From Eukaryota sp. TZLM1-RC (Eukaryota; Protista; Metamonada: BaSk clade): 64,000 nucleotides of DNA. The DNA lies in contig JAUPSS010000008.1 of assembly GCA_040285825.1 (NCBI GenBank), positions 124,001-188,000 on the forward strand. Reading direction: 5' to 3'. Positions 7,847-63,795 of this stretch are shown piece by piece (positions within the stretch are counted from its first letter, which is position 1; each line of letters opens with the position of its first letter). Both the position numbers and the translations under genes were made by a program. The notes below the pieces were generated by a model. That model worked only from the letters and a program-made list of their open reading frames with translations, made no database searches and was not told the origin of the DNA.

Positions 7847-7850
7847 CTAG

Positions 7851-18990: not shown

Positions 18991-19924
18991 AAAAAGTCGA
19001 ATTAGTTTGTTATGTTATAAATTGTAAGTAAAATGTTTTGTTGACACCTACATAAGAAATACATAATATAATATAACATTTTTTCAATCACTTAATGAAT
19101 AAAACAAACCACTTCGAGCAAATACTGCTACATTGTCAAAAAAATGTTTCTAGAATTGAAAGGTTGATTCTGTCAGTTGTTTTTGAGGTTCATGTTGTAT
19201 GAAACTGTGCGACGAAAAAGTTCGCTAAAAGAGGAACCAAGAAACATTCTGGTAACCATGGCTGGTCGCTGTGTCGCTGGCAAGATGGAGTTGGACATGC
19301 TTAAGTAAAGGTGAATTGAAAAAGCAATGATGTATAGAAACCTTGAGACACCTTCTCACAACTTGTGTAGTACACGAGAGTGGAAATGGAAATGGAACCC
19401 AAAAGGAAAAAAAGTAATCTTGTACCCAATAGTTGGTCTATTAATAGAACTCCCTTGATGAATTTGGTAGACTTAACAGACTTTTTTCCGAGCATGAGAA
19501 TGAGAGAAATGGTGTTTCAAATTCTGTTTTGGCTACGAAACAAGCGTATTCAAAGTTTTGTCACCAATGACAATCTTGTCGTGTTGAAATTGAAATTCTA
19601 TTTGCTTTAAATCTATTTTTACAAATACATTCTAGAAATCAATATCTTCAAATCAAGACAAGACTTAGTCATAATAATGAGTAAGAATGAACAAAGACGT
19701 CTAGCAATTGCAGAATTAGTAGAATCATCAGAAAGTGCAACTAACAAGAGAACAAGAAAACAAATTTCAAAGCTCTTGGAAAAGGATGAATTGGGCAACT
19801 GAAATGTTCAGTAAGTAGTTCCATGGGGTTTGAGATAGTGTAATCAATGCAAAACTTTCTGGAATCGAGATACTAAAAGATCTGATGTTGGCTGAAGACA
19901 TTCTGGATGGGAGAGAGAAATCAG

Positions 19925-20066
19925 AGGTGTTCAATTTGCAATACTTCAACCACATACATATTTAGTGGATATGTATGTAGTTGAAGTATGGATATTATCC
20001 ACATGTCTAAACTTAACCATCCCGAGATGATCGGCTTAGATCAAAATACGTAGGGTTTGAAGACTC
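19925..20066 (-). ncRNA. Candidate Fanzor omegaRNA scaffold
   Basis: Directly 3' of the Fanzor stop. Hairpin UCUAAGC-C-GAUCAUC-UCGG-GAUGGUU-AA-GUUUAGA, a 21-bp hairpin at 19941-19989 and terminal motif AAUUGAACACC. Homologous to 40430-40530. Confidence 0.6.
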
Positions 20067-20720
20067 TTACTGAGGTCTACTAAAAGCTAGGGGTCTTGTG
20101 TTCAAAAAGTACTCGCTTACTGCAATCTTCCACTGGTTTCTCGATGCAGAGATATCTCTTGACCAAACCACCCTACATTCTGGACATGTAAAATAGGCTT
20201 TAGGCTTTTCATTTCTCCATTCTCTACAAAGTAAAGGTCTTCATGGAAAACTTTGCAACACTTCACTTTGTCAATGTGTAGTATTCATCGCCATTCTTCA
20301 CGGTTGGAAATCGAGCATGGAGATACTTAAGAAAACGCTTTCTTGGTGTTTTCACTCTTTGACGGGATGATCCATCACCTCCTTTCTCAAACCAAATAAT
20401 AACTTCACGATTTTCAGGTTTGTTTTTGATTTTCTGGACAAAATGGCTGAATCTCTTTTGGCGATGGATAAAAAAGTCGAAGCGATTACGGCGAATAGTT
20501 TTACTTTTTCCTTTATGTAGATGGTGGTTCAATAAACTATGTCTTTCAGTGCTGTCTCTGTGAGGATTCACATTAAGCCACTGTTCCTTTTCAGTATGTT
20601 GAGTAACATCAACCAACTCTGTTGCCATTGCAATCAGATACTGATAATAGCGCTGAACAGTAGTAGGAGTTTGGAGTCGGTTGGCTCAACGGAGGAGGAG
20701 TTGTTATCGAGCGAGGCCAA
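20067..20720 (-). pseudogene. Fanzor (TnpB-like) nuclease, C-terminal half, frameshifted (subfamily X)
   Basis: RRNRFDFF..RQKR, VIIWF..GG, KTPRKRFL, GDEYYT (RuvC-II), KCC..CPEC zinc finger, WSRDISASRNQ (RuvC-III), RPLAFSRPQ*. Confidence 0.8.
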
Positions 20721-20752
20721 CAACTCTCTCCTCAATTTTCTCTATGTCTTTT

Positions 20753-21482: not shown

Positions 21483-22372
21483 CTATGTCTTTTATCACGG
21501 CTCTCCTTATATTCTCACTTATATTCTCAATTGAAAAGTAGCCTTTACCAAATCAATTTCCAAATTTGTTTAGCGGTTCCGGCTGATATAGAAAGTAAAT
21601 TATTTCTCAGAAGTTTTTTCATTAAATTAGTACAATTTCAGCAGAATAAGTAGTAGCTTAAAACATGAAATAAGAACAAAGGTTGTTAGAGTTTGCAATT
21701 CGGCACAAACCAGAGTTTACAAACCAAATACTGACTGGATTGATCTCAATTCATGTTGATTTTCACTTGAGGTTTTTACTAAGATTGCAAAGTTCTATTA
21801 GTGACAACGCAATGATCTATTATTTTTGCATTAAATGAAGAAATTTTACAAAGTGGACACTGAAAAATAAAAAGTGGAATCGATAATTTCCTCAATCACT
21901 CAATAGTAGTGTTCCTGAACAAAATTATTTTATTTTAAAATCCACGCTTAGAACATTGCAGGAACGAAAGACCAAAATGTATGAAGCTGATCTTATTCAA
22001 ATTGTATGCAGCTCAGCTGTTTTAGCTCAAGATCCTCATTCATTACTATTAGAAAAAAGTGTTTGTGAGAACAAGTCATCAGACTCATCACTATTTGTCA
22101 CCATTGTACCACAAGGTTGGGGCTATGTATGAAAATTTTGTGACAAAAATGATAATATATCTGTTTCACCATTGACCAACTTCTGTGAGAGCAACATGTT
22201 ATTGTTATAATTCATTGCAGTTCACCTTACGTCATGGTTTTAATTGTCCCAAATTGATAACTTGTCGTTCTTGATTACATGTTGTTAATTCTTTTCCGTT
22301 TTTCATAAACGGAAGACTGTCAGTAGAAGCAGAAAATTTTTGGAATGATTTCCAAAAATTGGTTAAAGAAAA

Positions 22373-33905: not shown

Positions 33906-36570
33906 GTAAATTGTCATTTATTCATTTAATAAAGAAAATCAAAACATAAAATACACAACTAAAGCTCCACATCCTGAAAACCTGCCTCCTTGACATCAAA
34001 ACAATTAATTTCCAAAGATTCAGAAAATTTCCCAAAAGAAGACAGTGAATCAGAAATCAGTTTTACCATTCCCTTAAAAATAGAAAATACAATCCTGTTT
34101 TGCCAGCCAACATGATTGAAATTTCTTCCAGTTCTTTCCTTTCCAACTACATCAAATACCGCAAGGAAAGCCATAGTAACCTTACTTAGAGATAAACCAA
34201 AGGGACATAAATTATATTGGGCATGAGAATTTTCATTAACCGAGGAAATGGGTTTCGCATATTTAGCAATTTTATATTTTTCGCCTGCAAGAAGAGGATT
34301 ATTTACATCTGAGTTAATGAGATGTTCGTTAGAGGAATTACAAGGGTCAATAGACATGGCGTCCAGAATAGTAAAACTACCATTTAAACCAGGAACAACT
34401 AGATCACCTCTAGTCAGACCCATAGAAGCTCTGTTGTAACGCGTACTATCAATATTGGGATCATCAAGAATTAATTTTGATAACAGCGGTTCTAAAAAGG
34501 AATCTACTCTATATGATTTGCACATTACATAAATTTGGTCCCTGACGTTATTATGCACTTTGCTTCTAAACGTAATGAAATGTTTGCAGTTCAAAAGATG
34601 AGTAAACAAAAGAGGTTTACCACATTTACAAGTTAAATGATTGGGCAAATTGTTTGGCCACAGAAAACAACGAAAACGCATGTTTAGAAGCCATTCATTG
34701 TTTTTTAACAAAAGTCGATAAACAGAGGGAACTTGAGTTACTAAAGCAGCAGCTGAACTATCACGAATATCCTTTAAAAAATTACCGAAAGCGGGATTTT
34801 TAGTTTTAGCCAAGCCAAGTCTTACTTCATAATCCAAGCCTTCATATAATTCAACCAGATGGTGCTGAAGCTTTTTCAAGCACAAACGTAAATTTGGAAG
34901 TGATCGGGTGGGAATTGCTTGAACATTTTGAGGAAAACACTGAATCCAGATATCACTAGGCAAATTTTCTAATTCAAATTGCAGTTGATTCAAGTAAAAA
35001 TTTGATTCACCATTGATCAGATGAACATCAAAAGGGAACCTTTGGAAAAATTCAAAAACAAAAATTTTACCACCTCCCAAAAATGCTACTTTACACAGAA
35101 TCGAAGATTTGGTGAATCCAATTCCACCCAAATCTGCTGAACAAAATACATGACTTCGAATTAAAGATTCATTTACTTCTAATAAAGAAGAAAAAAATTT
35201 GACTCGAAGTTTGTTAAAAGATCTGCAAAAATTGAGAGATACCGATGGGGGAGTTGACCTTAAAATATGAGTGAATTTTCCAGAATAACAAATTTTTAAA
35301 ATAAAAAATTTTATGTGTTTCTCAATGTCGCATTCAGCAATAAAACTAAGATCCTTGTCAAACTTCTCCAATAAATTGTTTAACTGGGAATAAATTTCAT
35401 CCAAATTGCCAAGCCAACATCCAAGAAACTTAAAAGCTTGTTGGTCATAATTGATAAAAGGAATCTGAGCTCTACCAATCATCAAAGATTGTTTTTCTCT
35501 ACCAATCAAGAAACATTTAGATGGGTTCAAAGCTAAACCAATTTCTTTGTATTTCGCCGCAATGTCTTCAGAAACCCTAGAAATGCTTTCAAAAGAACCA
35601 ATAATAGAAATGTCATCCATATAGGCAACAATACGCAAATCAGGGAAATCTTGTTGTGTCATTTTAATAATATTATGAATAGCCAAACAAAACAGCAAAG
35701 GGCCAAGAGGATCACCTTGTTTCACACCAGAAGAAGATTCAAGGGTAAAGGAGTCAAAAATTAAGTCTGATTTTTTTCCATAAATTAAATAAAAATATGC
35801 AGAAAGTTCAGGAAAATCATGAAGAAGCACATCAAAAATACAATTACGTTTCACAGAATTGAAAGCATTTTTGAAATCCAAATTGAAAATATATTGATGT
35901 TGTTGACTATTGAAAAAAACATCTGAAGTCATTGAAGCAACAGAAGCACCTTCAACAGTTTTTATACCAAATTGGAAAGGCTTCAAATAGTCCCTTGCTT
36001 TAGTAGAAATTCTGTTAAAAATAAGCGAAGAAAGCAATCTGGTTAATGACTCTCCAATAGCAATTGGTCTAACTCCATCAGGTATGTCACCTTTACCAGG
36101 TTTAACTAAAGCAACTAAACGGGCAGCAGTCAATTCAGGCGGAGGAACATAATTCAAACACATTAAATTTTGAAAATAGGAAGCAAGATCCTCAACAATT
36201 TCAGGAGCATTTTTACAGGCAGTTTTCAACAAATCAAAGGAAATGCCTGAAGGACCAGCAGCTTTTCCTTTTGGTAATTTAGCAACGGCATTCAATACTT
36301 CTTGAGCCTGAAATGGATTTTCGAGCCAATATTAACAAATAGAAGGCTTACTGGGGCAAAAATTTTCAGTTGGATGGAGGGATTTCAATTTTTCAACAGT
36401 TTCGAGATTGTTATCAGCCAGTTTTCCCGAAAAAATATTTTTTAAACCGCTTCCATATCTACCTCTCAAAAACAATTTTCTTGCTTGAAAAGATGAATTA
36501 GCTTTTCTCTGTTTTGGTTTGTAATTAATTTTCTTCTTCTTCAAAGACACAGTACAACTTGGACGCCGTG
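33906..36570 (-). mobile_element. CRE family F retrotransposon with a 778-aa uninterrupted RT+RLE ORF (33959-36295)
   Basis: KAAGPSG, RPIAIGE, LDFKNAFNS, QGDPLGPLLF, YMDD, CKCG..HLLNC, HNNVRD, RGDL..LDA, KYA; 5' part broken. Confidence 0.93.
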
Positions 36571-36619
36571 ACAGAAAGTGAAATATGAGAGGGTTGACCA
36601 GGGGAGGGAGAAAAAAAGG

Positions 36620-37525
36620 TTTCAATATAGAGGCATTTATTGAGCCATTAGTACGTAAGCTGTCTTCAGATCAAACTGATGATTCCTTTGGTAAAAGAAA
36701 GGCAAATTTACTAGCTCCATGGATCGATGGTGTTCTCAATGTTGTATATGTTGCCTCAGTTGATGTTTGCAAAAATTCTGCTGCTCGTTTAGTGTATTCC
36801 GCTGATTCGCCGTTATCTAACGCCGAAAAAAAAGAAGATAAAAAAATATGAAGAACCTTTGGCACAGTTAGGTAGAGTGGAACATGTGAAATATCAGTTT
36901 GTGCCGTTTGCAATTTCTCTTTTTGGCAATATTGGACCTTCAGGGTTGCACTATTCAGTGTTGTTGAATGGGTCTGGTAAAACAATGAATTCCACTTTCT
37001 GGTTAAATAGAATTGTTTTTTGCATTTTCAAGTCTATTCCAACAATGATTTCAAAGGTACTTCTAGCTATTGGTGTAGAATATGAACGTAATGCTGAGAG
37101 TAGGTTCAGCAATAGTGACGCTTGTTTGGAGGATATTGACTAGAGGTGATCTAGTTGTTCCTGGTTTAAATGGTAGTTTTACTATTTTGGACGCCATGTC
37201 TATTGACCCTTGTAATTCCTCTAACGAACATCTCATTAACTCGGATGTAAATAATTCTCTTCTTGCAGGCGAAAAATATAAAATTGCTAAATATGCGAAA
37301 CCCATTTCCTCGGTTAATGAAAATTCTCATGCCCAGTATAATTTATGTCCATTTGTTTTTTCTTTGCTTGGATCTCTAGGTAACGCTGCTATGGCTTTCC
37401 TTGAGGATTTTGTTGTAGTTGTAAAGGAAAGAACTGGAAGAATTTTCAATCGTGTTTACTGGCAAAACAGGATTGTATTTTCTATTTTTAAGGGAATGGT
37501 AAAAGTAATTTCTGATTCACTATCT
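36620..37525 (+). mobile_element. Fused RLE fragments of CRE families C (36620-37139) and F (37137-37525)
   Basis: Near-identical to the reverse complements of ~22630-23150 and ~34040-34420; joined over a TGA microhomology. Confidence 0.85.
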
Positions 37526-37617
37526 GTGTGATTCACCTGTGGTCAATAATAGGTGAATTTTAATTCTCACCTCACAAATTTCTCACATCTTCTTTTTACT
37601 GTCCTTTATTCACTTCT

Positions 37618-40560: not shown

Positions 40561-41462
40561 AGTGTTTATATATATGTTCTTATATGTTGCTTAAAATACT
40601 TCATAAATGTGTCAAATCTGCAACTTTTGGAGTTGAATCGGGTTCTCTTGCAGATTTATTTTTCTGATCATTATAAGCCAAGTTTAGAGAGTCACATATT
40701 TTTAGGGCAATATTTTTTATTCAGAAACCTTTTTCCTTCTTAATTCAACAGAATTGTTGTTCTGTCTGTCTACTAACATCTTTCAAAAAATGTGCTGCTT
40801 TGTAAACACATAAAAAACAGGGAATTTGTGTAAGGAATTTGTGTTAATAAAGCAGCAGCAAAACTATCACGAATGTCCTTTATAAATATTGAAAAATTTA
40901 TTAATCTATATTTCAGAAAATGGAAGTTGAAGAAGAGATGAAATGTGAGAAGTCTGTTTGTCGTTGGATGTCACGTCAACTCAAGAATCTATTTCTTCAA
41001 ACTAATCGTAACAATTTTCCGACTACTGATGATCAAATTGGTAATTTCATTAAACTTTTTGATGATGAAATCTTGAACGACGACGATGAAAATTGTTTGA
41101 ATCAATCAACAAAAACTGTTATTATAGACAGTACTCATTCCCAAAATTTGTAAGTTTTCAAAAGATGAAAATTGGATGAATTCAATTTTTCCTAGCTATT
41201 TCGGGATGATTTGGATGTTGAATTTCTATCATCAAAATTACTATTTATTTTATTAAACACAATTTTGAAGTGGTAGAATAATTTGCTTTGTAAACACATA
41301 AAAAACAACACTTAATAATTGATTTTCATGCTATTTCGGTTAAGTTTCATCATCATCATCACATTGAAAAAGTTTTTCGTTTTGAATCATTGTGATAAAT
41401 CATTGAATGCAAAATACAACTGTATATATGATATTACATACATATTCTTACTACTGTCAAGT

Positions 41463-41548
41463 GCCAAATAGAGCCCCCAAAATTACTTATGGGCTCTATT
41501 TCGATGGGTTCTATCACAGAGCCCCTGAAGAAAAGGACTCTATTTGGC
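41463..41548. repeat. MITE-like palindrome cluster
   Basis: GCCAAATAGAG...CTCTATTTGGC terminal inverted repeat with internal AAATAGAGCCC/GGGCTCTATTT. Confidence 0.5.
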
Positions 41549-42185
41549 CCAACATTCAACTTAAAGCCTATATTAAAAATGAACTAATGCACATTTTAAT
41601 TAATTTTAAGATTGTAGAGGAAATTAAAAGAGAGTTAGAGTTTATGATAACAATACACATTTTGGTTCATGTTCGAAGAAAAAATTATGCACAAATTATG
41701 ATTTTTATTCCTGGCACAGTCAAATTTTACAACTCAACAACAAACCTTAACTACTACTTTTTCTACTACAAACCCCATCAACTAAATGACGGTAGATTTT
41801 CGCTATTCACTTGTTTAGCAACTCGATTGTTATAAAACTCCGTCCTATTATTCAAAATGGAGTTACTATAACGAGAAAGAGCTTTAAATAATGAAAACAC
41901 GATTCTGTTTTCAAATCAAGTGTGCGACCATATCGGTTATGATTTAACGTGTATGATTTGTACATAAGATTCAATTTGTCATAACACCATGACAGAAGTG
42001 TTGATTGTCATGACGTCATGTCCAGGTATCATTACAAATGTGTCTATTTATCAGTTTGTGCACATTTCATTGTTTTGTGGATGTAAGGAATTGAAAATAA
42101 ATCAAATTTTTAAATTAACTGAAACTGAGAAATCAATCATTTCTGATTGTCTGCACCTTCCGTTTTCAGTAAGGTTTATGCAGTC

Positions 42186-45128
42186 ATGGACACGTGCCTG
42201 CTCCTTTCATCAGTTCTTTGAGCGGCCAGTGTGTGATTACATTGATGGACAGCTGACCAGAGTTTCCTGAAGACAGCCATTTTCTGACTCAGCATCAATT
42301 CTGAATCCATTGTCTTGACTTTGTGGCGGTCTCTAAGCCAAAAGTCAGACATCCATTCAACAGACCTAGCAAAGGCCATGTGTATGAGAAGCTCGAGCAA
42401 ATCTCTACACCATGACCGATTGCTGTCTTGTTCTTGTCAAGAACAGGTCGTAATCATGCACTTCCCACTAGGTGGCCTCTACAACAACTAGTGGATGCAA
42501 TGTGTTTGCCAGCAGCTTTTTGCTGATGGTTTTGTGTCGTGGAAGGTTAATTTCTTTCGCTCGTTTGCAATAGGTCATAACTGCCCTGCACCAGCCACTT
42601 ATGCTGGCTCTGTACTTCACAACAACGCCAACTTTCGGGAACCTCTTCTTTCTTGGTTCAACACACACCATACCATGGCTCTCACTCTGTTTAACTTCTT
42701 GGTTGGTGATCCTCAAAGATACAACACTCTTCTTTCTTCCCGAAGAGTGACTCTTATTCAAGAAAATAGTAGCTACAACTTTCGTTGCGGCTTAACATTC
42801 AAAAACCATCTGGAGCAAGCCTTCCACATACCTTTAGACGACATAGACTCACTCCCATCACTAATTTGAAACCTGCTTTTGTCCCTTTTCCTAATGGGTT
42901 GTCAACCATTTTATCTCCAAAAACACATCATCAACAATTTTGAAAAACCCTTATTTATTTTTTAAAACAAAAGCTCATGACTACACCATGTCTTCTAATG
43001 GTGATAGTATCCGTAAAACTTTTAAACCGCACCCCAAAGCAACACGAGTGAGATTGTCCGGAGAAGCCTTGGCTGATAAGAGAACGGTCAAGACCTCGCC
43101 AGAAAGCAAAAGCTACTGAGTGACAGGCACCTGATGATGAAACGTAAATGGTGTTCTGTGCCATCGACCCCAACCACTCAAATCTATGTAATTCCAGCAT
43201 TGGAACATGTTCAGGGCCCACCCTATCCAATATCTTTTCGGCACCAAAGCGACGAAAAATTCATCACTCCGCCTCAATGACCCACAAATCAATAGATGAT
43301 TATGACGTGCAGAAATTGAACCATTATCTGCTTGAAATATCAAGTATCGGTGACTATAAGGATTGTGAAGGTAATAACGTAAGACAAACATTGCTAAAGC
43401 AGCAAATATATCTGAGTGCTCGAGATGCATTGAGGAGAAACACATTTGTTAGTCAGGGAAATTTACTCATATTTTACGATCAACATCACCATCTATTTCT
43501 CTCGAATTTTGCAGAATTTTTAATGAATTAAGAACAAAATTTTTGGCTAATTTGCTCGATATTGATTCTTCTTTTTTACGTACTCATATTTTTTGTAGCA
43601 CAGAATTGGGAGGCCCGGATTTTCACAAATCAAAAAATTTATGTAAAGCCGCATTCATCGGTGGAGGCAAAAATTTCGTTTTTGAATTTTTGAAACGTTT
43701 TCCTGAAAACCAACATTTAATAGAATGTTGTGTTAGTGACTATTTAGTGTCCTTGCAGAGTGAAATTGAATGAAAAGAATCCCGTTTTTGCAAACTTTTT
43801 AATTGACCTTAAGGAAAGTAGCTCAAGTTGTCTTATTTCCCAGATTCCAAATGTATTTGGTCTATTATTAAAGGATCATCAATGGACAACTGCCTTCAGG
43901 ATGAGGTGTTTTCTGTGGCCATGTAGTGTGCCAAATGATTTAATTTGTCGTTGTGGTCAGCTCATTAATCTGAATCATTTATTTAATTGCAAATTTAATA
44001 TTACATATCGCTCAGTTGTTCACGATGCTGTTAGAGACCAACTTTACGCTATCTACAAAAGTCATCACATTGAAGCTTTTGTTGAACCACTTGTGCGAAG
44101 GTTGTCATCTGAAAATGAAGATGAAAATACTTTTGGGAAACGCCGTGCTGATTTAATTACCCCTGGGTCTGATGGTGTTATTAAAGTTGTTGATGTTGTC
44201 ACTGTTGATGTTTGTCAAGACTCAGCAATTGATTTTGCTAAAAGAGATGAAACCCCACTTTGCTTTGCTGAAAAGAGCAAAATCAAAAAGTACAATGAAC
44301 CCTTATCACAGCTAGGACGTGTTGAGCATGTCAAGTATCAGTTGGTTCCATTTGCGGTTTCTCTTTTTGGTAACATTGGAATATCTGGCATTAAATTTCT
44401 TGAAGGTTTCAGAAGTTTAATAAAAGAAAGAGCAGGAAAAGAATTGAACTTCAATTTCTGGCACAATAGAATTGTTTTTAGTATTCTTAAAGCAATTCCA
44501 GAAATGTTGACCAAAGCACTGTTACAATTAGCAATAGAGTATGAAAATCGCACGCTTAAAAGTTTTGATGATGTTGATGCGTGTTTTGAGGATATTGAGT
44601 TCTAGTTTTTGTTTAATGTTTTGTTAGCGTTGAAAATAAATTTCAATTTATAAAAAAGAAACACATTTGACTTCTTTAAAAGAAAACAAAAAAGACAGCT
44701 CAATTATCAACAAAGTGAAAAAATTTGCAGACGGTCGAGAAGTAAAGGTGTGGTACGGCAATGGAGGTGGTGGTACATCACGTCAAAAAGTGAAAACTCC
44801 ACGTAGGGCGTTTCTCAAGTTGTTACAATGTTCATTTGTTAATGTGAAGATCGGAGATGAATATATGACATCTGCAAAGGTGAACTGCTGCAAGATGCTA
44901 CACCAAAAGATCTATCGAGAAGTAGAAAGTGAAGTTAAAGTTCACAACGCCTATTTCAGTTGTCCGGAATGTAATCAAGTATGGTCTAGAGACATTTCTA
45001 CATCACTAAATCAGCTAAAAAATGCAATTAGTGAGCACTACTATGGAACAAGACCAGAAGCGTTCCAGACCACAAAGAAACTACCTTCAAAGCTACATAT
45101 TGTTCTAGAGGAGAAATGGGCTCACTGA
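42186..45128 (+). pseudogene. Near full-length Fanzor gene (subfamily X), degenerate, split by a CRE insertion at 43449-44656
   Basis: N-terminal region, FHIPLDD, MSSNGDSIR (TDGVS-like), AIDPNHSNL (RuvC-I D, 43166), RRNT|FDFF across the TSD, GDEYMTS (E, 44859), NCC..CPEC, WSRDIS (D, 44991), RPEAF. Confidence 0.85.
43449..44656 (+). mobile_element. 5'-truncated, internally deleted CRE family B insertion with 13-bp TSD
   Basis: TSD AGAAACACATTTG at 43436-43448 and 44657-44669; RLE ORF 43760-44605. Confidence 0.93.
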
Positions 45129-45250
45129 GATTGGTGGCCAATTATCCGAAGATTCTAGAACATCTGTGAACGATCTCACCAAGAATGAAAGTTCTTGGAA
45201 TAAGATTGAATGATGCTTGATGAAAGTATGCATTTCAATTGAAAACCACA
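45080..45250 (+). ncRNA. Candidate Fanzor omegaRNA scaffold
   Basis: Long hairpin closed by UGUUCUAGA/UCUAGAACA (45101-45162), two GAAA-tetraloop hairpins (45179-45198, 45205-45239), end GAAAACCACA; covaries with 61081-61161. Confidence 0.7.
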
Positions 45251-45262
45251 GATAGTACATAC

Positions 45263-45796
45263 ATGTCCTCCATGTTGTCGCCTGTGGATGTGTATCTTCC
45301 TGATCTTTTTCCATGCGAGAAGTCAATCCTTCGCTTTATTTCTCCATTTGCTTTTGCAAACATCGGGATAGCTCTTTGTATATTCTTGTCTGTGCTAGGT
45401 GCTTCTACAGGTATTGTCATGACTGGAGTTTCCCTCTTAGGTGCTGGTATAAAGAACCCCAGAGTTCGATCTCGCAACCTTATCAGCATTATATTCTGTG
45501 AAGCTGTTGCCATCTTTGGTGTAATCATTGGCATTCTTTTCATTAATAAAGAAGAGTTTGCTGATGAAATGGATTGTTACTCTGTGGTGACCACGTCCTA
45601 TGCTATTTTCTTTGGTTGCTTGACGGCAGGCCTAACCAACCTTGTATGTGGGATTGCGATTGGTAAGGTGGGGAGTTCGTGTGTTGTTGCTGATGCTTTT
45701 AATGAACAGTTATTCGTCAAGGTGTTCATTGTGGAAGTTTTTGCTTCAGCATTTAGTATTTTTGGCTTTATTGTGAGTGGTATGATCTTTGTCTAA
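45263..45796 (+). CDS. VMA16: V-type ATPase proteolipid subunit c'' (VMA16/ATP6V0B)
   Basis: LSVLGA..GI..TG.SL.G.GIK.PR...NLISIIFCEAVAIFG, LFVKVFIVEVFASA; first ATG at 45263. Confidence 0.93.
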   Translation: MSSMLSPVDVYLPDLFPCEKSILRFISPFAFANIGIALCIFLSVLGASTGIVMTGVSLLGAGIKNPRVRSRNLISIIFCEAVAIFGVIIGILFINKEEFADEMDCYSVVTTSYAIFFGCLTAGLTNLVCGIAIGKVGSSCVVADAFNEQLFVKVFIVEVFASAFSIFGFIVSGMIFV

Positions 45797-46859: not shown

Positions 46860-47220
46860 GTTCATTTCAATTTTAAAAGACATAGAAGACGCTAATGCTG
46901 ATAGAAACATACAACTTGTGGTTATTGCTTTTTCATTTCTTATAAACGGAAGACTATCAGCAGAAGTTGGCAATTCGTTTGAATGAATTGCAAAAAATTG
47001 TTGAAGAAAAGACAATGAAGAAACTTGATATCTGTCTATGACGCTCTCGGATTCACACCCCAAAATTAATAGATTTCCATGATTTTTCCATTGAGTAAAA
47101 CAAGCAGGGGCGAGAAAACAAGCAGATCAGGATTCTACAGAGGAAATATGGTTTAATGTGTTTCGTCCTATTAGTTCTGAGTTTTTTGATTAAGTTTTGG
47201 TGCTCAATAAAATATAAATC
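46860..47220 (+). mobile_element. Degraded CRE family A 3' fragment
   Basis: Homologous to 200-540. Confidence 0.7.
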
Positions 47221-47919
47221 TTGTTCACAATGTATATTGTTACTACCATGCAAATCTGTTAATTTTTATGGATCATTGATGGTGAGTATCCATTGGATTT
47301 CAGCCCAATATTATGGACCAATAAATACAAATATAAACAACAAAAAAACCACTTAACATGACTTGAGAAAAGTATTTATAGTGAATGAGATTGAAAATTT
47401 TAAAGTTCCTTTGAACAACAAAACTTGAAAAAATTTGATGTACATCGACCGTTTGAGATATGGGACTCCCCTATTTGCACGAATATCAACTAATGGTTTC
47501 CATAGACCTCCATTACTGTATTTTCAGTAATGTTTGCAAATTTTGAGAATAATTTGAGCTTAAATTATGAAACACATAGCAATCATTTCTTAAGGGCAAT
47601 TTTGACTCAGAAGATCTGTTGATAGAAATGGACAAACTCGATAGAAATTGTTTTAATCAAATGTTACCGTCCCATTCAAGCAACAGAAGAAAGTGATTGG
47701 AAATATATTTCGGTTTTCCAATGTCAAGAAATAAAGAGATATATAGTTTTACTTAATTTTTACTTTTTTTTAATTAAGGAACAAATATTATATTTTATAT
47801 CATTTCAAATAACAGAAAACTAAAAATTTTGTTAATTATCCCAAACACAATTATTCTGATTATCTTTTTCCAAATAAAAGCTTTTTGTTATTTAATATGT
47901 TTTATTAAAAACATATAAA

Positions 47920-48230
47920 TCAACATCTAAATAATTTATTTCTCTCAAAACAAAAACACTAGATGAACTCTCTCATAGTGAGATTCAAGAGAAAGCAAAG
48001 CATCAGAAACCATCTTCAACATCCCCTTACAAATTGAAAACACAATTCTATTATGCCAAAATAATCTGTTGGAATTTCTGTTAGTTCTTCTTTTTACAAT
48101 CATTTCAAAATCTGCCAAAAAACGCATAGCCGTTGGAGCAAGTGAACCAAAAAGAGAAAATACAAATGGATACAAATTGTATTTTGCATGCTGTTGACTG
48201 GCCAATTTGGACAAAGGTTCATTGTATTTA
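47920..48230 (-). mobile_element. CRE family E 3' fragment
   Basis: KYNEPLSKLASQQHAKYNLYPFVFSLFGSL matches 25435-25750. Confidence 0.8.
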
Positions 48231-48699
48231 ACCAAATAAAAACTGCCAGAGTTATTTCTATAACCAACCATTTCTTTGATAGTTGGCTTCCTTCATCGAT
48301 GAAGAAACATAGGACACAAGTTCAATAAACACACATTTTAGTTTGAATTTAAGATCACCTTTGCAACAGACACTAAATCCGATCTGGGCTTTCATCTGAC
48401 TAATAGAAATTTGGATAAAATCCATTGTTTTGTCGTCACTAAAATGGATTGAATGGATTACAGTGAGTTCTCTATATCTTCTCGGTCTTGGGAAACCAAG
48501 CAAAATCGAGAACTTATAGAAAGGTAAAAGTTATCCAATTTCTTGATTACAATCATTACACCAATTTAAATTACAAGTTTATTTAATATCAATAACTTCA
48601 CATGTAATTTCATTCAACTCGGATGTTAGAAGGTTTATCAACGATATTTGTTTCTTTTTCTTTAGTCTAATTGTTTCTAACTCACTTTCTACTTCATTC

Positions 48700-49262
48700 A
48701 GAATAGAAGGATGTTAGTAAGGAGTGAGGATGTTTGTGGTCAAAATTGTGCAACAGTTGTCAAATTGTGATGTTGTTGTGCCCTCGTTTGATGATGTCTT
48801 GAATGTTGTGATGTCGTAACAGTGGATGTTTGCAAGAAAAATGCCTTGAGAAATGCACAATCCGAAGTATCTCCCCTTGATGACTCCGAATTGTGCAAAC
48901 GAAAAAAATATGCAAATCCTTTGAAAGAATTGAAACATGTTCGCCATGTAGATTACCAAATTTGCCCATTTGCTATATCGTTGTATGGTCGTCTTGGATA
49001 AACTGCTATGAATTTTATTGATGATTTTGAAAACCTTGTAAAAAGAAGAATGAATAAGCGTTTTGATCGTCGTTTGTGGTTAAATCGTATTGTTTTTACT
49101 ATTTACAAAACAATTCCTAAAATGATTTCGAAAGCTTTGATGTCTGTCAGTGCACATTACGAAGACATTGCTGCTGTACGGTTTGATGGTATGAAAGGTT
49201 GTTTTGAAGATATTGACTTTTAGACTGTGGTTTAAAACATAAATTAATATACACCAAAAAAA
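48700..49262 (+). mobile_element. CRE RLE 3' fragment, family G
   Basis: DVVVPSFD..LNV, CPFAISLYGRLG, WLNRIVF, ends CFEDIDF*; A-rich tail. Confidence 0.75.
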
Positions 49263-52993: not shown

Positions 52994-53454
52994 CACTGCT
53001 CAGCAAAACAAAAGCACAAGAATTGGTGATCACGGCATCTTCTACTTGACTGTGCAGCATGATACCTTCTTTGTCAAAGAGCTTTGACATGCATTGCAAC
53101 CAATCAGTGTTAGAAATCCGACAGGTCACTGACCTAGGTCGGGTCGGCCGACATAAGTTGAGAGTTGTGAAATAAATCAAATATTTCTTTCAAACCCAAT
53201 ATCTAATAATAATGAAATAAGAAATATATTTAATATTGACCAGCTATTACAATGTATAATACATCATTTCACCAATGGAATTTGTTGAAGATACATCCAA
53301 AAGAAAACATTCCTCTGCTGCTTTAGAAACCGATGGTATTACCCCAGAACTCAAGCTGCTCCTCTCAACTGAATGCACACGTGAGGAAATTTACGCTTAT
53401 TATAGAATTGTTTTTTTTGATCTAGAATCTTTTCAACATCAAGTGAAGATTGGT

Positions 53455-55370
53455 AAATGCAAAAATGCACGCTTAATTGCTTTAAAAAAGAATGAATCAA
53501 AAATAAGGCCTATTGCAATTGGTGAATCTTTGTCTCGTATTCTTGCTTCAGCTGTGTTTGGTAGGATTGGTAAAAAAGCTAAAGATTTTCTTAGTCCTTT
53601 CCAATTTGGAATTAAAACAGTTGATGGTGCATCTTCTGCAGCACTCTCTTCTGATGTCTTTTTTAATTCAAATACTTCGAATTATATTTTGAATTTAGAT
53701 TTTAAAAACGCTTTCAATGCAGTGAAGAGGTCGTCCATCTTGCCCTTGCTTCAAACTCATTTTCCAGAAGCTGTCGTTCTTTTACAATTTTTATGGCTCA
53801 CAGTCGACTCTTGTTTATGAGGAATTCAATCTAATATCATCATCTGGTGTCAAACAAGGTGATCCATTAGGTCCTTTTTTTTCTGCCTTGCTATCCATCC
53901 TTTAATGTGTGAATTAAAACAAGAATTTCCAGATGTTCATATAACTGCTTATATGGATGACATATCAATAATTGGTCCAATTGATTCATTGAGAACAATT
54001 GCTGAAATTGTTCAACAGCGCTATTATCAAATGGGTCTTTCTCTAAATATTTCCAAGTGTTTATTGATTGGTAGAGAGCCTGCTGATCTCATTATTGATG
54101 ATCAAAGTGTTCCTTTTATCAATTATTTTGAATCAGGATTTCGTTCTTTAGATTGTTATTTAGGCAATTTTGATGAAGTTCGAAATCAACTTTCCTCTCT
54201 TTTGGATAATTTTGAAGAAGAATTGATGGTTCTTTCAGATTTAAACATCATAAATCAAAAATAGAAATCAGATTCCCAAAAGTTTGATTTCCTTGAAATT
54301 TGCATACGCTAAATTGCAGAAAAAGATATTAAAAGTTTTTGAAAACTTGGATTTCACTGTTCGTCTTAGCTTGGCTAAAGAAGAGAATCCCGTTTTTGCA
54401 AACTTTTTAATTGACCTTAAGGAAAGTAGCTCAAGTTGTCTTATTTCCCAGATTCCAAATGTATTTGGTCTATTATTAAAGGATCATCAATGGACAACTG
54501 CCTTCAGGATGAGGTGTTTTCTGTGGCCATGTAGTGTGCCAAATGATTTGATTTGTCGTTGTGGTCAGCTCATTAATCTGAATCATTTATTTAAATGCAA
54601 ATTTAATATTACATATCGCTCAGTTGTTCACGATGTCGTTAGAGACCAACTATACGCTATGTCCAAAAGTCATCACATTGAAGCTTTTGTTGAACCACTT
54701 GTGTGAAGGTTGTCATCTGAAAATGAAGATGAAAATACTTTTGGGAAACGCGGTGCTGATTTAATTACCCCTGCGTCTGATGGTGTTATTAAAGTTGTTG
54801 ATGTTGTCACTGTTGTTGTTTGTAAAGACTCAGCAATTGATTTTGCTAAAAGAGATGAAACTCCACTTTGCTTTGCTGAAAAGAGCAAAATCAAAAAGTA
54901 CAATGAATTCTTATTTCAGCTAGGACGTGTTGAGCATGTCAAGTATCAGTTGGTTCCATTTGCTGTTTCTCTTTTTGGTAACATTGGAATATCTGGCATT
55001 AAATTTCTTGAAGGTTTCAGAAGTTTAATAAAAGAAAGAGCAGGAAAAGAATTGAACTTCAATTTCTGGCACAATAGAATTGTTTTCAGTATTCTTAAAG
55101 CAATTTCAGAAATGTTGACCAAAACACTGTTACAATTATGAATAGAGTATGAAAATCGCACGCTTAAAAGATTTGATGATGTTGATGCGTGTATTGAGGA
55201 TATTGAGTTCTAGTTTTTTGTTTTTGTTGGCGCCTTTAGGCTTAAATAGAATAAGGGCAAAATAAATCAACTTTATGTCAATCATCTTTATCTCAACCAC
55301 TTTTGCAACCTAAGGCAAAATTTAATGTTTTGTTAGCGTTGAAAATAAATTTCAATTTATATAAAAAATA
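53455..55370 (+). mobile_element. CRE family B retrotransposon, degenerate with internal deletion
   Basis: RPIAIGE, LDFKNAFN, QGDPLGP, YMDD, RLE near-identical to 43775-44605; ~100-bp insertion in the 3' UTR (55225-55320). Confidence 0.9.
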
Positions 55371-55456
55371 CACAATTTTTTTTGATCTTTGACATTATAT
55401 ACCATTACTCGATAGACACCTTTTTTTGTCAATAAGCCATATCTTGAGGTTTACTT

Positions 55457-58852: not shown

Positions 58853-61027
58853 CTATATGATAGTTTGAATTGGTAATTTGAAATGCTGATCCTTGTATTT
58901 GGTAGGTTTGATGGTTAACTTTTTGAACTTCAGAATCCTAGAGCAATCAACCACAAACAAAGCTTCAGAATCAGATTCTATTTGGATTTCATTAATAAAG
59001 TGCTCCAAGTAAACATCTTTGCTATCTTTGAAAACTTCAGGAACACAAGACAATAAAGACAAGGAAAGAAACTCATCGGATAGATTAGGAAATATACTTC
59101 CAATATAATCTTTGTGGATAAATGAAGAGGAAAAAAGGCTACTAGTTGAATTATTCCTAAAGTGATTAGAAATAGATAGAGAATAAACAGCACCAGAGTA
59201 GGTTACATCCTTACTGTGTTTACCGATAGAGTTCACTAGTGAATACCTTATATTGAGAGAAATGGAACTGTGATCAAACTCCCTTATTGCTCGTATCTCA
59301 TCAAGGCTAAGTTGATCCGAGTTAAATAACCAAGACTCAGAAGCTATATTGGATGCTAAAACTGAAGCCAGACAGCCAATATCCAAACAAGATACCATAT
59401 AATCAACGTTTGGTGTGTAACTTGAGTCATAGGATTCAATTGTCCACAAAGGAACATTGAGGGAATTATTGCCCAGAAGAAGGTAATTTGATAAAGAAAA
59501 TGATAAAAACGTATGGATTGATTGATCATAATCAGAGTTCTGTTTATAACAATTTTCTTCATTAGTGGAATTATAGAAACAAAAATTGCTATATCTTGGA
59601 AAAAATAATGGAGTTGGTATTAGGGAACAAATGCCGAGAAAAGGATGATAAATAAAGTGTGCATAGATAGAATCTATTTCAGACAGGCATTTAGCTATAT
59701 TAAAACATCCTGGATTCTCAGGTAAAACCCTTGGAATATAAAATATTTCTATATTATTAAGAAATAAGTCACGGCAAGAATCTAAGCAGTTGAACAAAGC
59801 AGCTCCAAATTCCGAAATACTGACGTCATCACCGCTCAGAATTAACTTGACTTTAGAAGACTTTGCAGAATATGAGAGAAAAAGCAAATGGTCAGCCAAA
59901 GAAGTATGATAAGAAATACATTCAAGCATTAACACCGGAAAGTTGATAATCATTGGTATAGATTGATTGACTGATTCTTTGAACCTTTTCAATATTAAAC
60001 CACCACTTTCTGTTACATTGTGGTCTTGAGTGGAATTTAGTAGACTTTCTAATAAAGAAGTGTGGGAATCTGTGAAAAAATAAAAGGCAAAGTCAGTTTT
60101 TGTTAGAGAATTTAGGTCAAAAAGGTAAGGAAACTGATCAAAAATGATTGATGATGTGATATCTCGTGATGAGGTGACATTTGATTGATTACCATTAGAT
60201 TTAAAATTTGCCCATCCAATTAGTCGATGGACCAGCTTACTAAATGGCCTAGCAAATTTTAAAAGAAGGGAATTCAAAAAATCCAGAAATGATTCATCAA
60301 TTTGACAATACAAACAGGACAATAACAGATAAAGCAAAGAAACTCCAAAAGAAATCTTTGTTCCTTTGCTGAAGCAAAACCTTAAAAACTGTATTATATG
60401 ATTATTATCAAATTTATTAAAACTACAATTATAAAGAATTGAACCACTGGCTGCACGTCCAGAAAGAATAACTGAGTAGTAAAAATGGGAGAATAATCCA
60501 TCAACTAATTGATTTGCAAAGGTAAAGGAAGGACAAAAAGAATAAGAAAAACGGTGTGATGATTTTACAAAATGATGAAACAATTCGAGAGGACCATTTG
60601 ACTGATTGAACGGAAGGAAAAGGGGGGAATCATGATGAGTTAGAAGACTGTTGAGCAGTGCACTTAGTTGAGTCAGTGCGGGATCGTGGAAGAAGATAGG
60701 ACCAGTTAAATGTAGGTAAGAAATTGTACAAGAAAGTTGTAAAGCCAGGGAACGAAGATACGAATCTAAAGCAGAGAAGGAAATAGGTTTAAGTTTATTC
60801 AATGCTTTGGAGTCCATTGCTAGAGAAAGAACGTCATGTAGAGGGGTTGAGGGGTGCTTGTTTAATAAGATTGAACAAAGCGACGCAATTACTGAAGAAA
60901 GAGCAAATGTAGCGGAATCAGGACGTTGAAATACCGTGGACCAAAAAGTCAATGACTGATGGTAAGAGAACCTTTCTTCAGATGTACTAATGGCAGATTC
61001 CAACAAGGAAGCAATATCGGTAACCAT
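58853..61027 (-). CDS. 724-aa protein, possibly PI3K regulatory p101/p84 (PIK3R5/6)-like
   Basis: Intact ORF; KLILSGDD, IEIFYIP, LSEIDSIY and terminal LPIQTI recall p101 motifs in the same order (recalled similarity only). Confidence 0.45.
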   Translation of the reverse strand: MVTDIASLLESAISTSEERFSYHQSLTFWSTVFQRPDSATFALSSVIASLCSILLNKHPSTPLHDVLSLAMDSKALNKLKPISFSALDSYLRSLALQLSCTISYLHLTGPIFFHDPALTQLSALLNSLLTHHDSPLFLPFNQSNGPLELFHHFVKSSHRFSYSFCPSFTFANQLVDGLFSHFYYSVILSGRAASGSILYNCSFNKFDNNHIIQFLRFCFSKGTKISFGVSLLYLLLSCLYCQIDESFLDFLNSLLLKFARPFSKLVHRLIGWANFKSNGNQSNVTSSRDITSSIIFDQFPYLFDLNSLTKTDFAFYFFTDSHTSLLESLLNSTQDHNVTESGGLILKRFKESVNQSIPMIINFPVLMLECISYHTSLADHLLFLSYSAKSSKVKLILSGDDVSISEFGAALFNCLDSCRDLFLNNIEIFYIPRVLPENPGCFNIAKCLSEIDSIYAHFIYHPFLGICSLIPTPLFFPRYSNFCFYNSTNEENCYKQNSDYDQSIHTFLSFSLSNYLLLGNNSLNVPLWTIESYDSSYTPNVDYMVSCLDIGCLASVLASNIASESWLFNSDQLSLDEIRAIREFDHSSISLNIRYSLVNSIGKHSKDVTYSGAVYSLSISNHFRNNSTSSLFSSSFIHKDYIGSIFPNLSDEFLSLSLLSCVPEVFKDSKDVYLEHFINEIQIESDSEALFVVDCSRILKFKKLTIKPTKYKDQHFKLPIQTII

Positions 61028-61080
61028 AATTAAAAGATGTTGAAGTGACCTTGAAAGTTTCTAGTTGAACTGATTCAATT

Positions 61081-61161
61081 TGTGGTTTTCATTTGAAATG
61101 CATACTTTCGTCAAGCATCATTCAAACTTATTCCAAGAACTTTCATTCTTGGTGAGATCGT
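61081..61161 (-). ncRNA. 3' half of candidate omegaRNA (copy of 45170-45250)
   Basis: 81-nt inverted copy with three substitutions, all structure-preserving. Confidence 0.65.
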
Positions 61162-61164
61162 CCA

Positions 61165-61830
61165 TCAGGGTAACCATCAACTTTCCGGCCTTGTTTTAAA
61201 TCCAAAGGCAAAGAATATTATTCAACCGCCTGTCATGACCCATGCATCACCAAATTGCCTTCTCGTACAGAATTTCCGCGAATATTTATATGAAATAGCA
61301 ACGCCTTTGATGTGGGTACCGACACAGGAAGAAATCAGCAATCCCAACTTCCGTCCGAGAACTATATTAGACCAACTGCTGATAAATGAAGATCGCCGAG
61401 TCCTGCGCTGCAACTAGTTTGATTTTTTCATAAAAAGGCAAAAAGAATAATGGGATTTATTGAAAAAATTAAACAGACGGCTAATGGAAGAAAAATTATA
61501 ATTTAGTTTGGCAGTGGAGGTAATGGGCCATCAAGACAATCTGTGAAAACCCCAAGGAAGCGCTTTTTGAAGGAGATTCAGAAACATTTTACATATGTGA
61601 AGCCTAATGGAGATGAATTCTACACATCTGCCAAAACGAATTGCTGTAAGGTGTTCAATCAAAAAGTGTATCACGATGATGGGAGGGTGAACAATGATAA
61701 GTTTGTATGCCTTCAATGTCAGACACTCTCGTCGAGGGACATCTCAGCTTCCAGAAACCAACTGGAGATTGCCATAAGTGAGCACTACTACAATAAAAGA
61801 CCGGAGGCGTTTCGGAGACCACGTAGATAA
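61165..61830 (+). pseudogene. Fanzor C-terminal half (subfamily X) with two in-frame stops
   Basis: FDFFIKRQKR, FGSGG, KTPRKRFL, GDEFYTS, NCC..CLQC, SRDISASRNQ, RPEAFRRP. Confidence 0.82.
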
Positions 61831-62000: not shown

Positions 62001-62569
62001 AACTCAGGAAGAGGAAGTGGAGGTGGGGGAGCACCAGAAAAAGTACGAGGAGGGGGTGCAGCTGAAAGGGGTGGCGCAGCACAAGTTCTTGGCGCAGCTT
62101 GGGATGGAAGATCTGCAGTAGACTCGAGTTAAGACTCAAGAATAGCCATCAGTGCCTATACAGGCTGTCTTTTGTTAGTTATCTCCGCTAGTCCATTTTG
62201 TGGGATCCAATCTTTTATAGTCAATGTGTGAGCGCACTGAACGAAACCCATAATCTCTATAATAGAAAAGCCAATAATTTTAACAAGATCACTGGCGAAC
62301 TCAAATATAGTTGAATGAGGAGCAAAAGGTTCTTGGTCAAAGAGGGAAAGAAATGGTAAGGAAGAAACGGCTGTTGTGACTTGCCTTGGTAACATGTTTG
62401 TACTGAATAAAGGAATTAAATTGTGAAATTTTAGGAATTTATTAAATCCACAAACACCCTTGATTAAACGAAAAACTGCTTTGACTAACAACAATTTCAT
62501 CAAATTTCACATCAGTTTACCCTTTTTGGAAAAGAAAATGCTTAAATCAGATCCAATATCTATTATAAA

Positions 62570-63795
62570 TGTGCTGACATATCAATTTGTCCATGTTCTT
62601 TTGATTTGTGGATGTAAGAAGTTAAAAATAGACCAATTTTGAAAAGTAACTGAAACTCAGAAATCAATATTTCTGATTGTCTGTGCACCTTCCGTTTTCA
62701 GAAAGGTCTATGCAGTCATGGACACCCTTCATCGAGCCTGCACCCTTCATCAGTTCTTTGAGCAGCCAGTGTGTGATTATTTTGATTGACAGCTGACCAA
62801 GGTCACCACCATGGCTCACCTGGGCAGCTTGCTGGCCAGAGTTTTTGCTGTGCGCTTCGCTGAAGACAGTCATCTCCTGACTCAGCATCAATTTTGGATC
62901 GAGTGTTTTGACGTTGTGGCGGTCTCTAAGCCAAAAGTCAGACATCCATTCAACAGACCTAGCAAAGGCCATGTGTATGAGAAGCTCGAGCGAATCTTTA
63001 CATCATGGCCAATTGCTGTCTTGTTTTTGTCAAGAACAGGTCGTAATCATGCACTACCCACTAGTAGGCCTCTACAAAAACTAGTTGCTGCAAAGTGCCG
63101 CCAGCTGCAAGGCAACTACCAGCAGTTTTTTGCTGATGGACTTTTGTCGTGGAAGCTTAACTTCTTCCGCTCGTATGCAGTAGGTCATAACTGCCCTGCA
63201 CTAGCCACTTAAGCTGGCTCTGTTCTTCACAATAGCACGAACTTTCGTGAACCTCTTCTTTCTTGGTTCAACACACACCATACCATGGCTCTTACTCTGT
63301 TTAACTTCTTGGTTGGTGATCCTCAAAGATACCACACTCTTCTTTCTTCTCGAAGAGTGACCCTTAATCAAGGGAATAGTAGCTACAACTTTCGTTGCGG
63401 CTTAACAATCCAAAACCATCTGGAGCAAGCCTTCCACATACCTTTAGACGACATAGACTCACTCCCATCGCTAATTTGAAACCTGCTTTTGCCCCTTTTC
63501 CTAATGGGTTTTCAACCATTTTATTTCCAAAAACACATCATCAACAATTTTGAAAAACCCTTATTTATTTTTTAAAACAAAAGCTCATGACTACACCATG
63601 TCTTCTAATGGTGATAGTATCCGTATAACTTTCAAGCCGCACCCCAAAGCAACACGAGTGAGATTGTCCGGAGAAACCTTGGCTGATAAGAGATCCAGAG
63701 GGGAACTTGATTACTATGAAACCACTCGGAATAGAAAACATACCTTGCAAGTCAAGGTTGAACGACCAAAACCTCGCCAGAAAGCAAAAGCTACT
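62570..63795 (+). pseudogene. Fanzor N-terminal half (subfamily X) plus conserved upstream region; probable ATG at 62718
   Basis: Close paralog of 42030-43116; RACTLHQF...MAHLGSLL...FWIECF, FHIPLDD, SSNGDSIRITF; truncated before RuvC-I. Confidence 0.78.

What the first reader, a model, noticed from the sequence alone, without database searches (positions are those of the whole stretch)
42030..45250. Reconstructable divergent Fanzor RNA-guided nuclease system hidden by a LINE insertion
Seen: excising the TSD-flanked CRE insert joins 42186-43448 to 44670-45128; with paralog 62718-63795 filling deletions this gives roughly 600 aa. All three RuvC acidic residues are present (AIDPN, GDEYMTS, SRDIS), followed by a structured RNA candidate. 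Shared unusual features across copies: DPN for DPG, W(F/Y)GxGG, SRQxVKTPR, adjacent CC instead of the first CxxC, DISAS.NQ instead of D.NAA.NI, SNGDS for TDGVS. Known: the DE..TS position of the catalytic Glu matches Fanzor1. Inference: an undescribed, diversified Fanzor lineage with four gene fragments in this window alone, so intact copies may exist elsewhere. All copies here are pseudogenes.
Basis: partly seen in the sequence, partly recalled or inferred. Interest (0 to 1): 0.88.

Follow-up and report, generated by a model that had tools for sequence, protein, structure and literature searches.

The report
Promoter-docking Fanzor1 elements of Skoliomonas
This is a broken copy of a previously undescribed family of eukaryotic RNA-guided DNA nucleases (Fanzor1) from the free-living protist Skoliomonas; intact copies exist elsewhere, and the elements carrying them sit just upstream of host start codons, with junction scars that may record the nuclease's own cuts.

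Summary
Confirmed. The window is from Skoliomonas litria (TZLM1-RC). A 5'-truncated RLE-type LINE (43449-44656, 13-bp TSD) splits a decayed Fanzor gene; LINE-free paralogs exist (L003; run X1). About 29 near-full-length relatives with the D-E-D triad occur in three Skoliomonas species and nowhere else searched; they form one long-branch clade (100/99). A predicted model matches SpuFz1, PpFz1 and GtFz1 best: Fanzor1. No paper linking Fanzor to Skoliomonas or Metamonada was found. Their target duplications start at the right end and follow (T)TG: 13 bp with one mismatch here (41431-41443), 6-13 bp in truncated copies, 2 bp in two apparently full-length ones. Twelve of 14 right ends lie within 70 nt upstream of a co-oriented host ATG (null 0.05). 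Best reading: a one-ended DNA element kept by Fanzor homing (TAM about TTG); LINE-driven retrotransposition is the main rival. Nuclease activity and omegaRNA expression are untested. Other first-stage notes on this genome had already flagged the Fanzors and the start-codon docking.

The parts
41430..41443 (+). Left target-site duplication of element A (14 nt counting the shared G; one mismatch to 45251-45264), preceded by AT (ATG|)
   Evidence: 2 matches in the window, 0.03 expected; shuffle frequency 0.004
41444..42029 (.). Mosaic left part of element A; unrelated to the left parts of L003 or copy B; contains a repeat also seen in L001 and L003
42186..43448 (+). Fanzor1 pseudogene A, N-terminal part (REC/WED region with SNGDS at 42994; RuvC-I Asp codon 43166-43168); several deletions and frameshifts
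43436..43448 (+). 5' copy of the LINE TSD (13 bp)
43449..44656 (+). 5'-truncated RLE-type non-LTR retrotransposon with A tail; about 96% identical to copies at 20745-21485 and 54377-55377
44657..44669 (+). 3' copy of the LINE TSD
44670..45085 (+). Fanzor1 pseudogene A, C-terminal part: RuvC-II Glu codon 44859-44861, CC..CxxC zinc finger, RuvC-III Asp codon 44991-44993 (open frame runs to 45128 only through a 2-nt deletion at 45067)
45086..45251 (+). Candidate omegaRNA scaffold and precise right end (TATGCAT..TGAAAACCACAG); the terminal stem closes on the last bases
   Evidence: searches (z -3.4 for 45105-45252; z -4.3)
45252..45266 (+). Predicted guide = right TSD = 5' UTR and ATG (45263) of the host gene
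   Evidence: guide role inferred from Fanzor1 architecture (PMC10432273, PMC10711439)
45263..45796 (+). Host V-ATPase proteolipid (subunit c family) gene, co-oriented, ATG 12 nt after the element end
   Evidence: (PF00137)
62059..63795 (+). Paralog B (same subfamily, about 91% identical to A over aligned bases): left part and N-terminal coding region, no RuvC
61184..61830 (+). Paralog C: RuvC-half fragment of another subfamily (85% identical to P0072)
61080..61164 (-). Solo right end of the A subfamily, 53 nt upstream of the co-oriented ORF 58853-61027(-)
19922..20716 (-). Paralog D: RuvC-half fragment of a further subfamily with a hairpin-rich 3' end (probable right end 19922, ATG about 20 nt on); cut upstream by another copy of the same LINE

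Best explanation
A Skoliomonas-specific Fanzor1 lineage carried by non-autonomous, TIR-less, one-ended DNA elements. SHOWN: Fanzor1 fold; D-E-D triad in many intact copies; a fixed right end after a structured 100-165 nt segment; variable mosaic left ends; duplications that begin at the right end and follow (T)TG; right ends docked 6-70 nt upstream of co-oriented host ATGs. INFERRED: (1) the right end is transcribed as the omegaRNA scaffold and the next ~15 nt (host 5' UTR/ATG) are the guide; (2) a transposase acting in trans (unidentified; HUH type most likely) inserts full-length copies at TTG^NN in core promoters, leaving at most 2 bp duplicated; (3) the Fanzor RNP cuts element-free alleles (TAM about TTG plus guide) some 14-17 nt past the TAM; (4) the right broken end copies the element leftward from the sister or homolog and is joined by end-joining to the left broken end, which still carries 6-13 nt of target. 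This yields long TSDs, truncated or mosaic left ends and solo right ends. Copy A is such a repaired insertion at the V-ATPase gene, later inactivated by deletions and a LINE.
For: Fold. Triad in 29 near-full-length proteins. Young dispersed families at 94-99% identity. Shared right-end motif in 3 species and 6 or more subfamilies. Terminal stem above shuffles in most copies. TSDs: L004 13 bp, L007 11 bp, A 13 bp with 1 mismatch, L005 6 bp (weak), all after TG; L006 and L012 share one left end with TTG plus 2 nt equal to their own right flanks. Background TG frequency is 0.07. L007's left junction carries a 10-nt filler reading as TTAGGG-like repeats, as expected at a healed break. 12 of 14 ends lie within 70 nt of a co-oriented ATG against a null of 0.049. 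Fanzor1 non-target-strand cuts at 14-17 nt: PMC10432273. The same signature (intact 3' end, TSDs of 7-19 bp only in truncated copies, after a fixed motif) marks the Chlamydomonas Fanzor-Helitrons CRe-1,2,3 (PMC3627910). Restorative homing: PMC13565253.
Against: No transposase or autonomous partner was found in any of 12 loci. Only 3 TSDs are statistically strong, and several copies show none (L001, L008-L011). The 2-bp full-length pattern rests on two copies. The genome's LINEs make 9-14 bp TSDs and also tend to nick after T. No empty allele was seen, no RNA data exist, and a sequence-based alignment gave no consensus structure or covariation. The model has pTM 0.48. L003, W61, L011 and L010(-) did not beat shuffles for the terminal stem.
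Confidence: 0.5

Rival explanations
1. The elements are retrotransposed in trans by the genome's abundant RLE LINEs. A Fanzor transcript trimmed to the base of the terminal stem (..CACAG) is copied by target-primed reverse transcription, giving 5' truncation and 7-14 bp TSDs; the shared G is priming microhomology.
For: 5' truncation with a fixed 3' end; TSD lengths overlap the LINEs' 9-14 bp; LINE nicks are mostly after T; no DNA transposase nearby; the LINEs are young and abundant.
Against: No A tail and no carried-over old guide at any right end. The LINE insertions seen lie in repeats and inside Fanzor genes, not at start codons. Two copies share one left end with only 2 bp duplicated. Left parts are mosaics swapped between subfamilies. 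No retroelement-borne Fanzor is known (PMC13565253).
Confidence: 0.25
2. Ordinary non-TIR cut-and-paste elements (Mutator-like) with a promoter preference. The transposase makes the TSD and Fanzor is a passenger; left ends decayed after insertion.
For: Mutator elements prefer gene 5' ends and make 9-11 bp TSDs (own knowledge). A Ulp1-Fanzor fusion in S. sp. RCL recalls Mutator-type cargo. One unverified scan note reports a Mutator-borne Fanzor in this genome.
Against: TSD length varies from 2 to 13 bp; TSDs abut different left ends, so truncation occurred at insertion or repair; orientation is strict; no TIRs.
Confidence: 0.15
3. Docking at start codons reflects selection or domestication rather than targeting: copies survive only where the right end supplies promoter or splice-acceptor function to the downstream gene.
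For: Strict co-orientation; the end reads YAG like a 3' splice site; the host's promoter is displaced by about 2.6 kb.
Against: Neutral insertions into the 55% repetitive genome should also survive but are not seen. Host introns are 25-38 nt, so a kilobase intron is unlikely. Copies decay freely.
Confidence: 0.1

Closest known systems
Fanzor1 (SpuFz1, PpFz1, GtFz1; PMC10432273, PMC11423790)
   Same: About 600 aa; whole-length structural match; D..E(alt, DE..TS)..RD triad; TDG-like WED motif; DPN as in SpuFz1; C-terminal RP..F.R; structured RNA at the element's right end closed by a terminal stem.
   Different: About 12% identity to solved Fanzors, and not found by sequence or profile search of the PDB. 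CC-K-x-x-H replaces the first CxxC. GxGG and SRQxxK in place of GNW/GDW. The helix after RuvC-I appears replaced by a proline-rich coil (low-confidence model). No TIRs.
Chlamydomonas Fanzor-Helitron2 elements CRe-1,2,3 and Mucor MCi-2 (PMC3627910)
   Same: No TIR, intact 3' ends, variable 5' ends, variable TSDs starting at the 3' end after a fixed motif, extra captured sequence at 5' junctions.
   Different: The motif is (T)TG, not TTTT. No Helitron termini or RepHel partner shown here. Docking at host start codons is not reported for them. Protein lineage is distinct.
IS200/IS605 and IS607 TnpB restorative homing (PMC13565253)
   Same: Guide equals the right flank; TAM equals the insertion motif; cutting of the empty allele favours retention (inferred here).
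   Different: Eukaryotic; no TnpA; duplications and ragged left ends instead of scarless insertion.
Replitron-1 of Chlamydomonas (PMC10288648)
   Same: Orientation-specific insertion after a dinucleotide (RG), variable TSDs; the author suggested Fanzor cutting as a cause.
   Different: No terminal direct repeats or Rep gene here, and the fuzzy end is on the other side.

Membership tests
Fanzor/TnpB | D-X(125-275)-TS-XX-[C4 zinc finger]-X(5-50)-RD motif | tested here: met
   D375, E536/TS, RD577 in P0107. First cysteine pair is CC rather than CxxC; PF07282 hit E 2e-5 to 2e-6, mostly just under the cut-off
Fanzor/TnpB | RuvC fold of TnpB/Cas12 type | tested here: met
   AF2 model of P0107; residues 360-604 match Cas12, TnpB and Fanzor at Z 11-14
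Fanzor1 | Rearranged catalytic Glu (DE..TS next to the zinc finger) | tested here: met
   (hhalign 99.4% to canonical Fanzor1-like proteins); shared with Fanzor2, so not diagnostic alone
Fanzor1 | Long Fanzor1-type REC/WED half with TDG motif; closer to Fz1 than Fz2 structures | tested here: met
   Fz1 entries E 6e-8 to 1e-3 over the full length, ApmFz2 E 0.13; GtFz1 Z 13.8 over 387 residues; T/S-D/N-G motif
Fanzor1 | Phylogenetic nesting within Fanzor1 | tested here: inconclusive
   Skoliomonas clade 100/99 on a long branch among Fz1-like metagenomic proteins; no Fz2 or TnpB outgroup, midpoint root, C-terminal 160 columns only
Fanzor1 | omegaRNA expressed from the right end with a ~15-nt flank guide | not testable with these tools
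   No RNA run available; structure predictions only; no Rfam match
Fanzor1 | TAM-dependent RNA-guided DNA cleavage | not testable with these tools
   Needs RNP assay; TTG predicted from junctions
Fanzor2 / IS607EU | Serine recombinase partner, ~450-500 aa, no TSD | tested here: not met
   No recombinase among called genes in 12 loci; 590-660 aa; TSDs present
Helitron2-borne Fanzor1 | Asymmetric TIRs, 5' hairpin and an autonomous RepHel partner | tested here: inconclusive
   A hairpin lies at the shared left boundary of L008/L009; no RepHel found; genome not searchable as a whole
TIR (Mariner/MuDR/hAT)-borne Fanzor1 | Terminal inverted repeats and fixed-length TSD | tested here: not met
   no TIR beyond CTG..CAG in one family; TSD 2-13 bp
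CRE clade (inserted LINE) | RT phylogeny placing it with CRE | not tested
   Only RVT_1 and R2-like best solved match for a longer related LINE

The most novel reading that the evidence does not exclude
A class of Fanzor1 elements that spreads into new host core promoters with its own RNA-guided nuclease as part of the insertion reaction (Fanzor cut plus RT- or DNA-templated copying), without a dedicated transposase, so that each new guide covers a host start codon: natural RNA-guided gene insertion in a eukaryote.
Probability: 0.15. Interest if true: 0.92.

Novelty: new variant of a known kind. Interest (0 to 1): 0.68.

Why it matters
It extends Fanzor1 to Metamonada (no report found in the library) with at least ten subfamilies at 30-50% identity and dozens of intact genes: a new pool of compact RNA-guided nucleases with a predicted TTG TAM. 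The junctions bear on a question open since 2013, and raised again for Replitrons in 2023: whether Fanzor cutting causes the variable TSDs of one-ended elements. The prediction (TAM = motif before the TSD; TSD no longer than the non-target cut distance) is testable in culturable protists with long-read genomes. Oriented docking at start codons was not found described for any Fanzor element in the papers read.

Tried and rejected
phmmer of the C-terminal piece and a family profile against PDB sequences found no Fanzor. The search for related loci found no relatives in metagenome, viral or prokaryotic contigs, nor tblastn in plasmids. Rfam was blank. MAFFT alignments of right ends gave no consensus fold, and my hand-drawn helix was out of register, so covariation is not shown. 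The 87-nt match 45167-45253 / 61078-61164 was first read as a TIR; rejected, as it is a second right end facing its own host gene. A spliceosomal-intron model was disfavoured because host introns are 25-38 nt. TSD candidates in L003 (8 nt) and L005 (7 nt) are individually within chance (0.12-0.13); L005 is kept as weak because it lies at the homology boundary. The sigma-70 scan is irrelevant to a eukaryote.

Full report
Source. A window protein (27754-30714) maps exactly to contig JAUPSS010000008.1 of Eukaryota sp. TZLM1-RC. Contig sizes match the N50 of Skoliomonas litria, a free-living metamonad with a 31.9-Mb, 55% repetitive genome (PMC11316075); the name assignment rests on that match.

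Observation. The insert 43449-44656 is flanked by an exact 13-bp duplication. It is a 5'-truncated, A-tailed retroelement with near-identical copies in the window; a longer relative has an RT domain whose best solved match is R2. Paralog L003 aligns continuously across the junction, and a contig in run X1 skips exactly 1221 nt. The motifs lie at 42994, 43160, 44853 and 44985. Copy A is dead beyond the LINE: about ten indels against L003, and the frame to 45128 comes from a 2-nt deletion at 45067. Three other fragments and one solo right end are in the window.

Protein. The stop-free C-terminal piece hits PF07282 weakly. Among 1.84 billion representatives it finds full-length proteins from S. 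litria, S. sp. RCL and S. sp. GEM-RC1 (E 4e-42 to 6e-19), then canonical Fanzor1-like proteins; one of the latter hits SpuFz1, GtFz1 and PpFz1. A profile search returned 36 clusters, all Skoliomonas. Several subfamilies have many dispersed copies at 94-99% identity with open frames; 29 near-full-length proteins keep D, E and D. P0070 is the uninterrupted member of copy A's subfamily. An AlphaFold2 model of P0107 (pLDDT 64.5, pTM 0.48) gives Fanzor1 structures as the top seven Foldseek hits, with Fanzor2 at E 0.13, and GtFz1 first in the wide search (Z 13.8, 387 residues, rmsd 11). Language-model neighbours are Fanzor-like clusters of Nucleocytoviricota. Profile comparison with canonical relatives gives 99.4%. 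On a tree of the C-terminal 160 columns the Skoliomonas proteins form one long-branch group, 100/99, unrooted and without Fz2. Real peculiarities are CC-K-x-x-H for the first CxxC, GxGG/SRQ, and a proline-rich stretch after RuvC-I. DPN is shared with SpuFz1.

Element anatomy. Homology between copies stops sharply 75-170 nt after the stop codon, at TATGCAT-N5-8-TGAAA-N2-3-CACAG or close variants, in at least six subfamilies of three species; here at 45251. This segment folds better than shuffles in most copies (z -2.3 to -4.3). In four of five subfamilies with a clear result the last bases pair with an upstream CTGTG-like arm, as for the terminal stem of Fanzor1 omegaRNAs (PMC10711439). Covariation could not be shown. 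Left ends vary, are mosaics of other repeats, and are shared between unrelated subfamilies. No TIR or transposase was found. The flank right of the end recurs at the left boundary: 13 bp in L004, 11 bp in L007, 13 bp with one mismatch in copy A (41431-41443; 0.03 expected), 6 bp in L005 (weak). L006 and L012 share one left end preceded by TTG and two bases equal to their own, differing, right flanks. All six junctions have TG directly before the duplication; the background is 0.07, and the G was part of the search seed. L007 carries a telomere-like filler at the junction.

Target. Twelve of 14 right ends lie within 70 nt upstream of a co-oriented host start; a random oriented intergenic position does so 4.9% of the time (binomial 1e-14; 0.006 even at a null of 0.5). 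The sample favours intact copies but includes two solo ends. Here the host gene is a V-ATPase proteolipid, ATG at 45263, so the predicted guide covers its 5' UTR and start codon.

Mechanism. Fanzor1 enzymes cut the non-target strand 14-17 nt past the TAM (PMC10432273). If an empty allele is cut and only the right end is repaired by copying from an occupied allele, the left end keeps the TAM plus up to that many target bases. That predicts a TSD starting at the right end, preceded by the TAM, variable and capped, with a ragged left end, as seen. The same pattern marks Chlamydomonas CRe-1,2,3, where the authors asked whether Fanzor causes it (PMC3627910); Craig raised it for Replitron-1 (PMC10288648). 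Primary insertion needs a transposase in trans that I did not find. The main rival, LINE-driven retrotransposition, fits the TSD lengths and the nick after T but not the missing tails, the 2-bp class or the promoter targeting. All mechanistic steps are inference.

Novelty. No paper holds Fanzor with Skoliomonas or Metamonada (the library is incomplete). First-stage notes on other windows of this genome had independently flagged Fanzor abundance, missing transposases, start-codon docking, a retrotransposition idea and multi-copy HUH Rep genes. They are unchecked and not counted as support; I tested docking and TSDs myself. Verdict: a real Fanzor1 pseudogene from a new, probably still active lineage with an unusual element architecture; new variant of a known kind; interest 0.68.

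Noticed in passing
proteins P0140, P0143, P0152 (S. sp. RCL; KAL0220472.1, KAL0218073.1, KAL0220407.1): A multi-copy Fanzor1 subfamily of 910-977 aa has an N-terminal Ulp1/SUMO protease domain (PF02902, above cut-off) fused to the nuclease.
   Followed up: partly
proteins P0075, P0086 (L008/L009:6001-7992): One S. litria subfamily begins with a CxxC..H..C zinc knuckle; L008 and L009 share AATGA right after the element end, and their shared left boundary begins with a short hairpin.
   Followed up: no
L007:4167-4190: A 10-nt filler reading as TTAGGG-like telomere repeats lies between the left TSD and the element body, suggesting telomerase action at a break.
   Followed up: partly
L001:1344-7982: Two near-identical Fanzor elements lie back to back as an inverted duplication and share the same right flank.
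   Followed up: no
L010:8188(-) and window:61080(-): Solo right ends without a Fanzor gene face host genes on the opposite strand, back to back with another Fanzor element at divergent promoters.
   Followed up: partly
window:12047-14568(+): Telomerase reverse transcriptase (Telomerase_RBD plus RT), split over two ORFs.
   Followed up: no
window:3111-7774(-): Decayed Ty3/Gypsy-like LTR retrotransposon (RT, RNase H and integrase-like ORFs; repeat pair 2922-3113 / 7658-7849), judged from translations.
   Followed up: no
window:15677-26945, 33959-37531, 46876-49220, 53275-55377: Many nested RLE-type LINE fragments of several subfamilies with 9-14 bp TSDs; the same subfamily hit two Fanzor copies (43449 and 20745).
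   Followed up: partly
window:29189-29542: A 36-bp coding tandem repeat (12-aa unit) inside the 986-aa HEAT/TORTIFOLIA-like gene.
   Followed up: no
window:49592-52996(-): Subtilisin-like protease with EGF and CUB-like regions and a C-terminal membrane anchor, judged from the translation.
   Followed up: no
protein P0036 (ENA, 747-nt contig): A non-Skoliomonas fragment shares the CC zinc-finger variant and RDVSA, a possible outside relative; long branch.
   Followed up: partly
L006, L010-L012, L008, L009 host genes: Skoliomonas spliceosomal introns inferred here are very short, 25-38 nt, GT-AG.
   Followed up: partly
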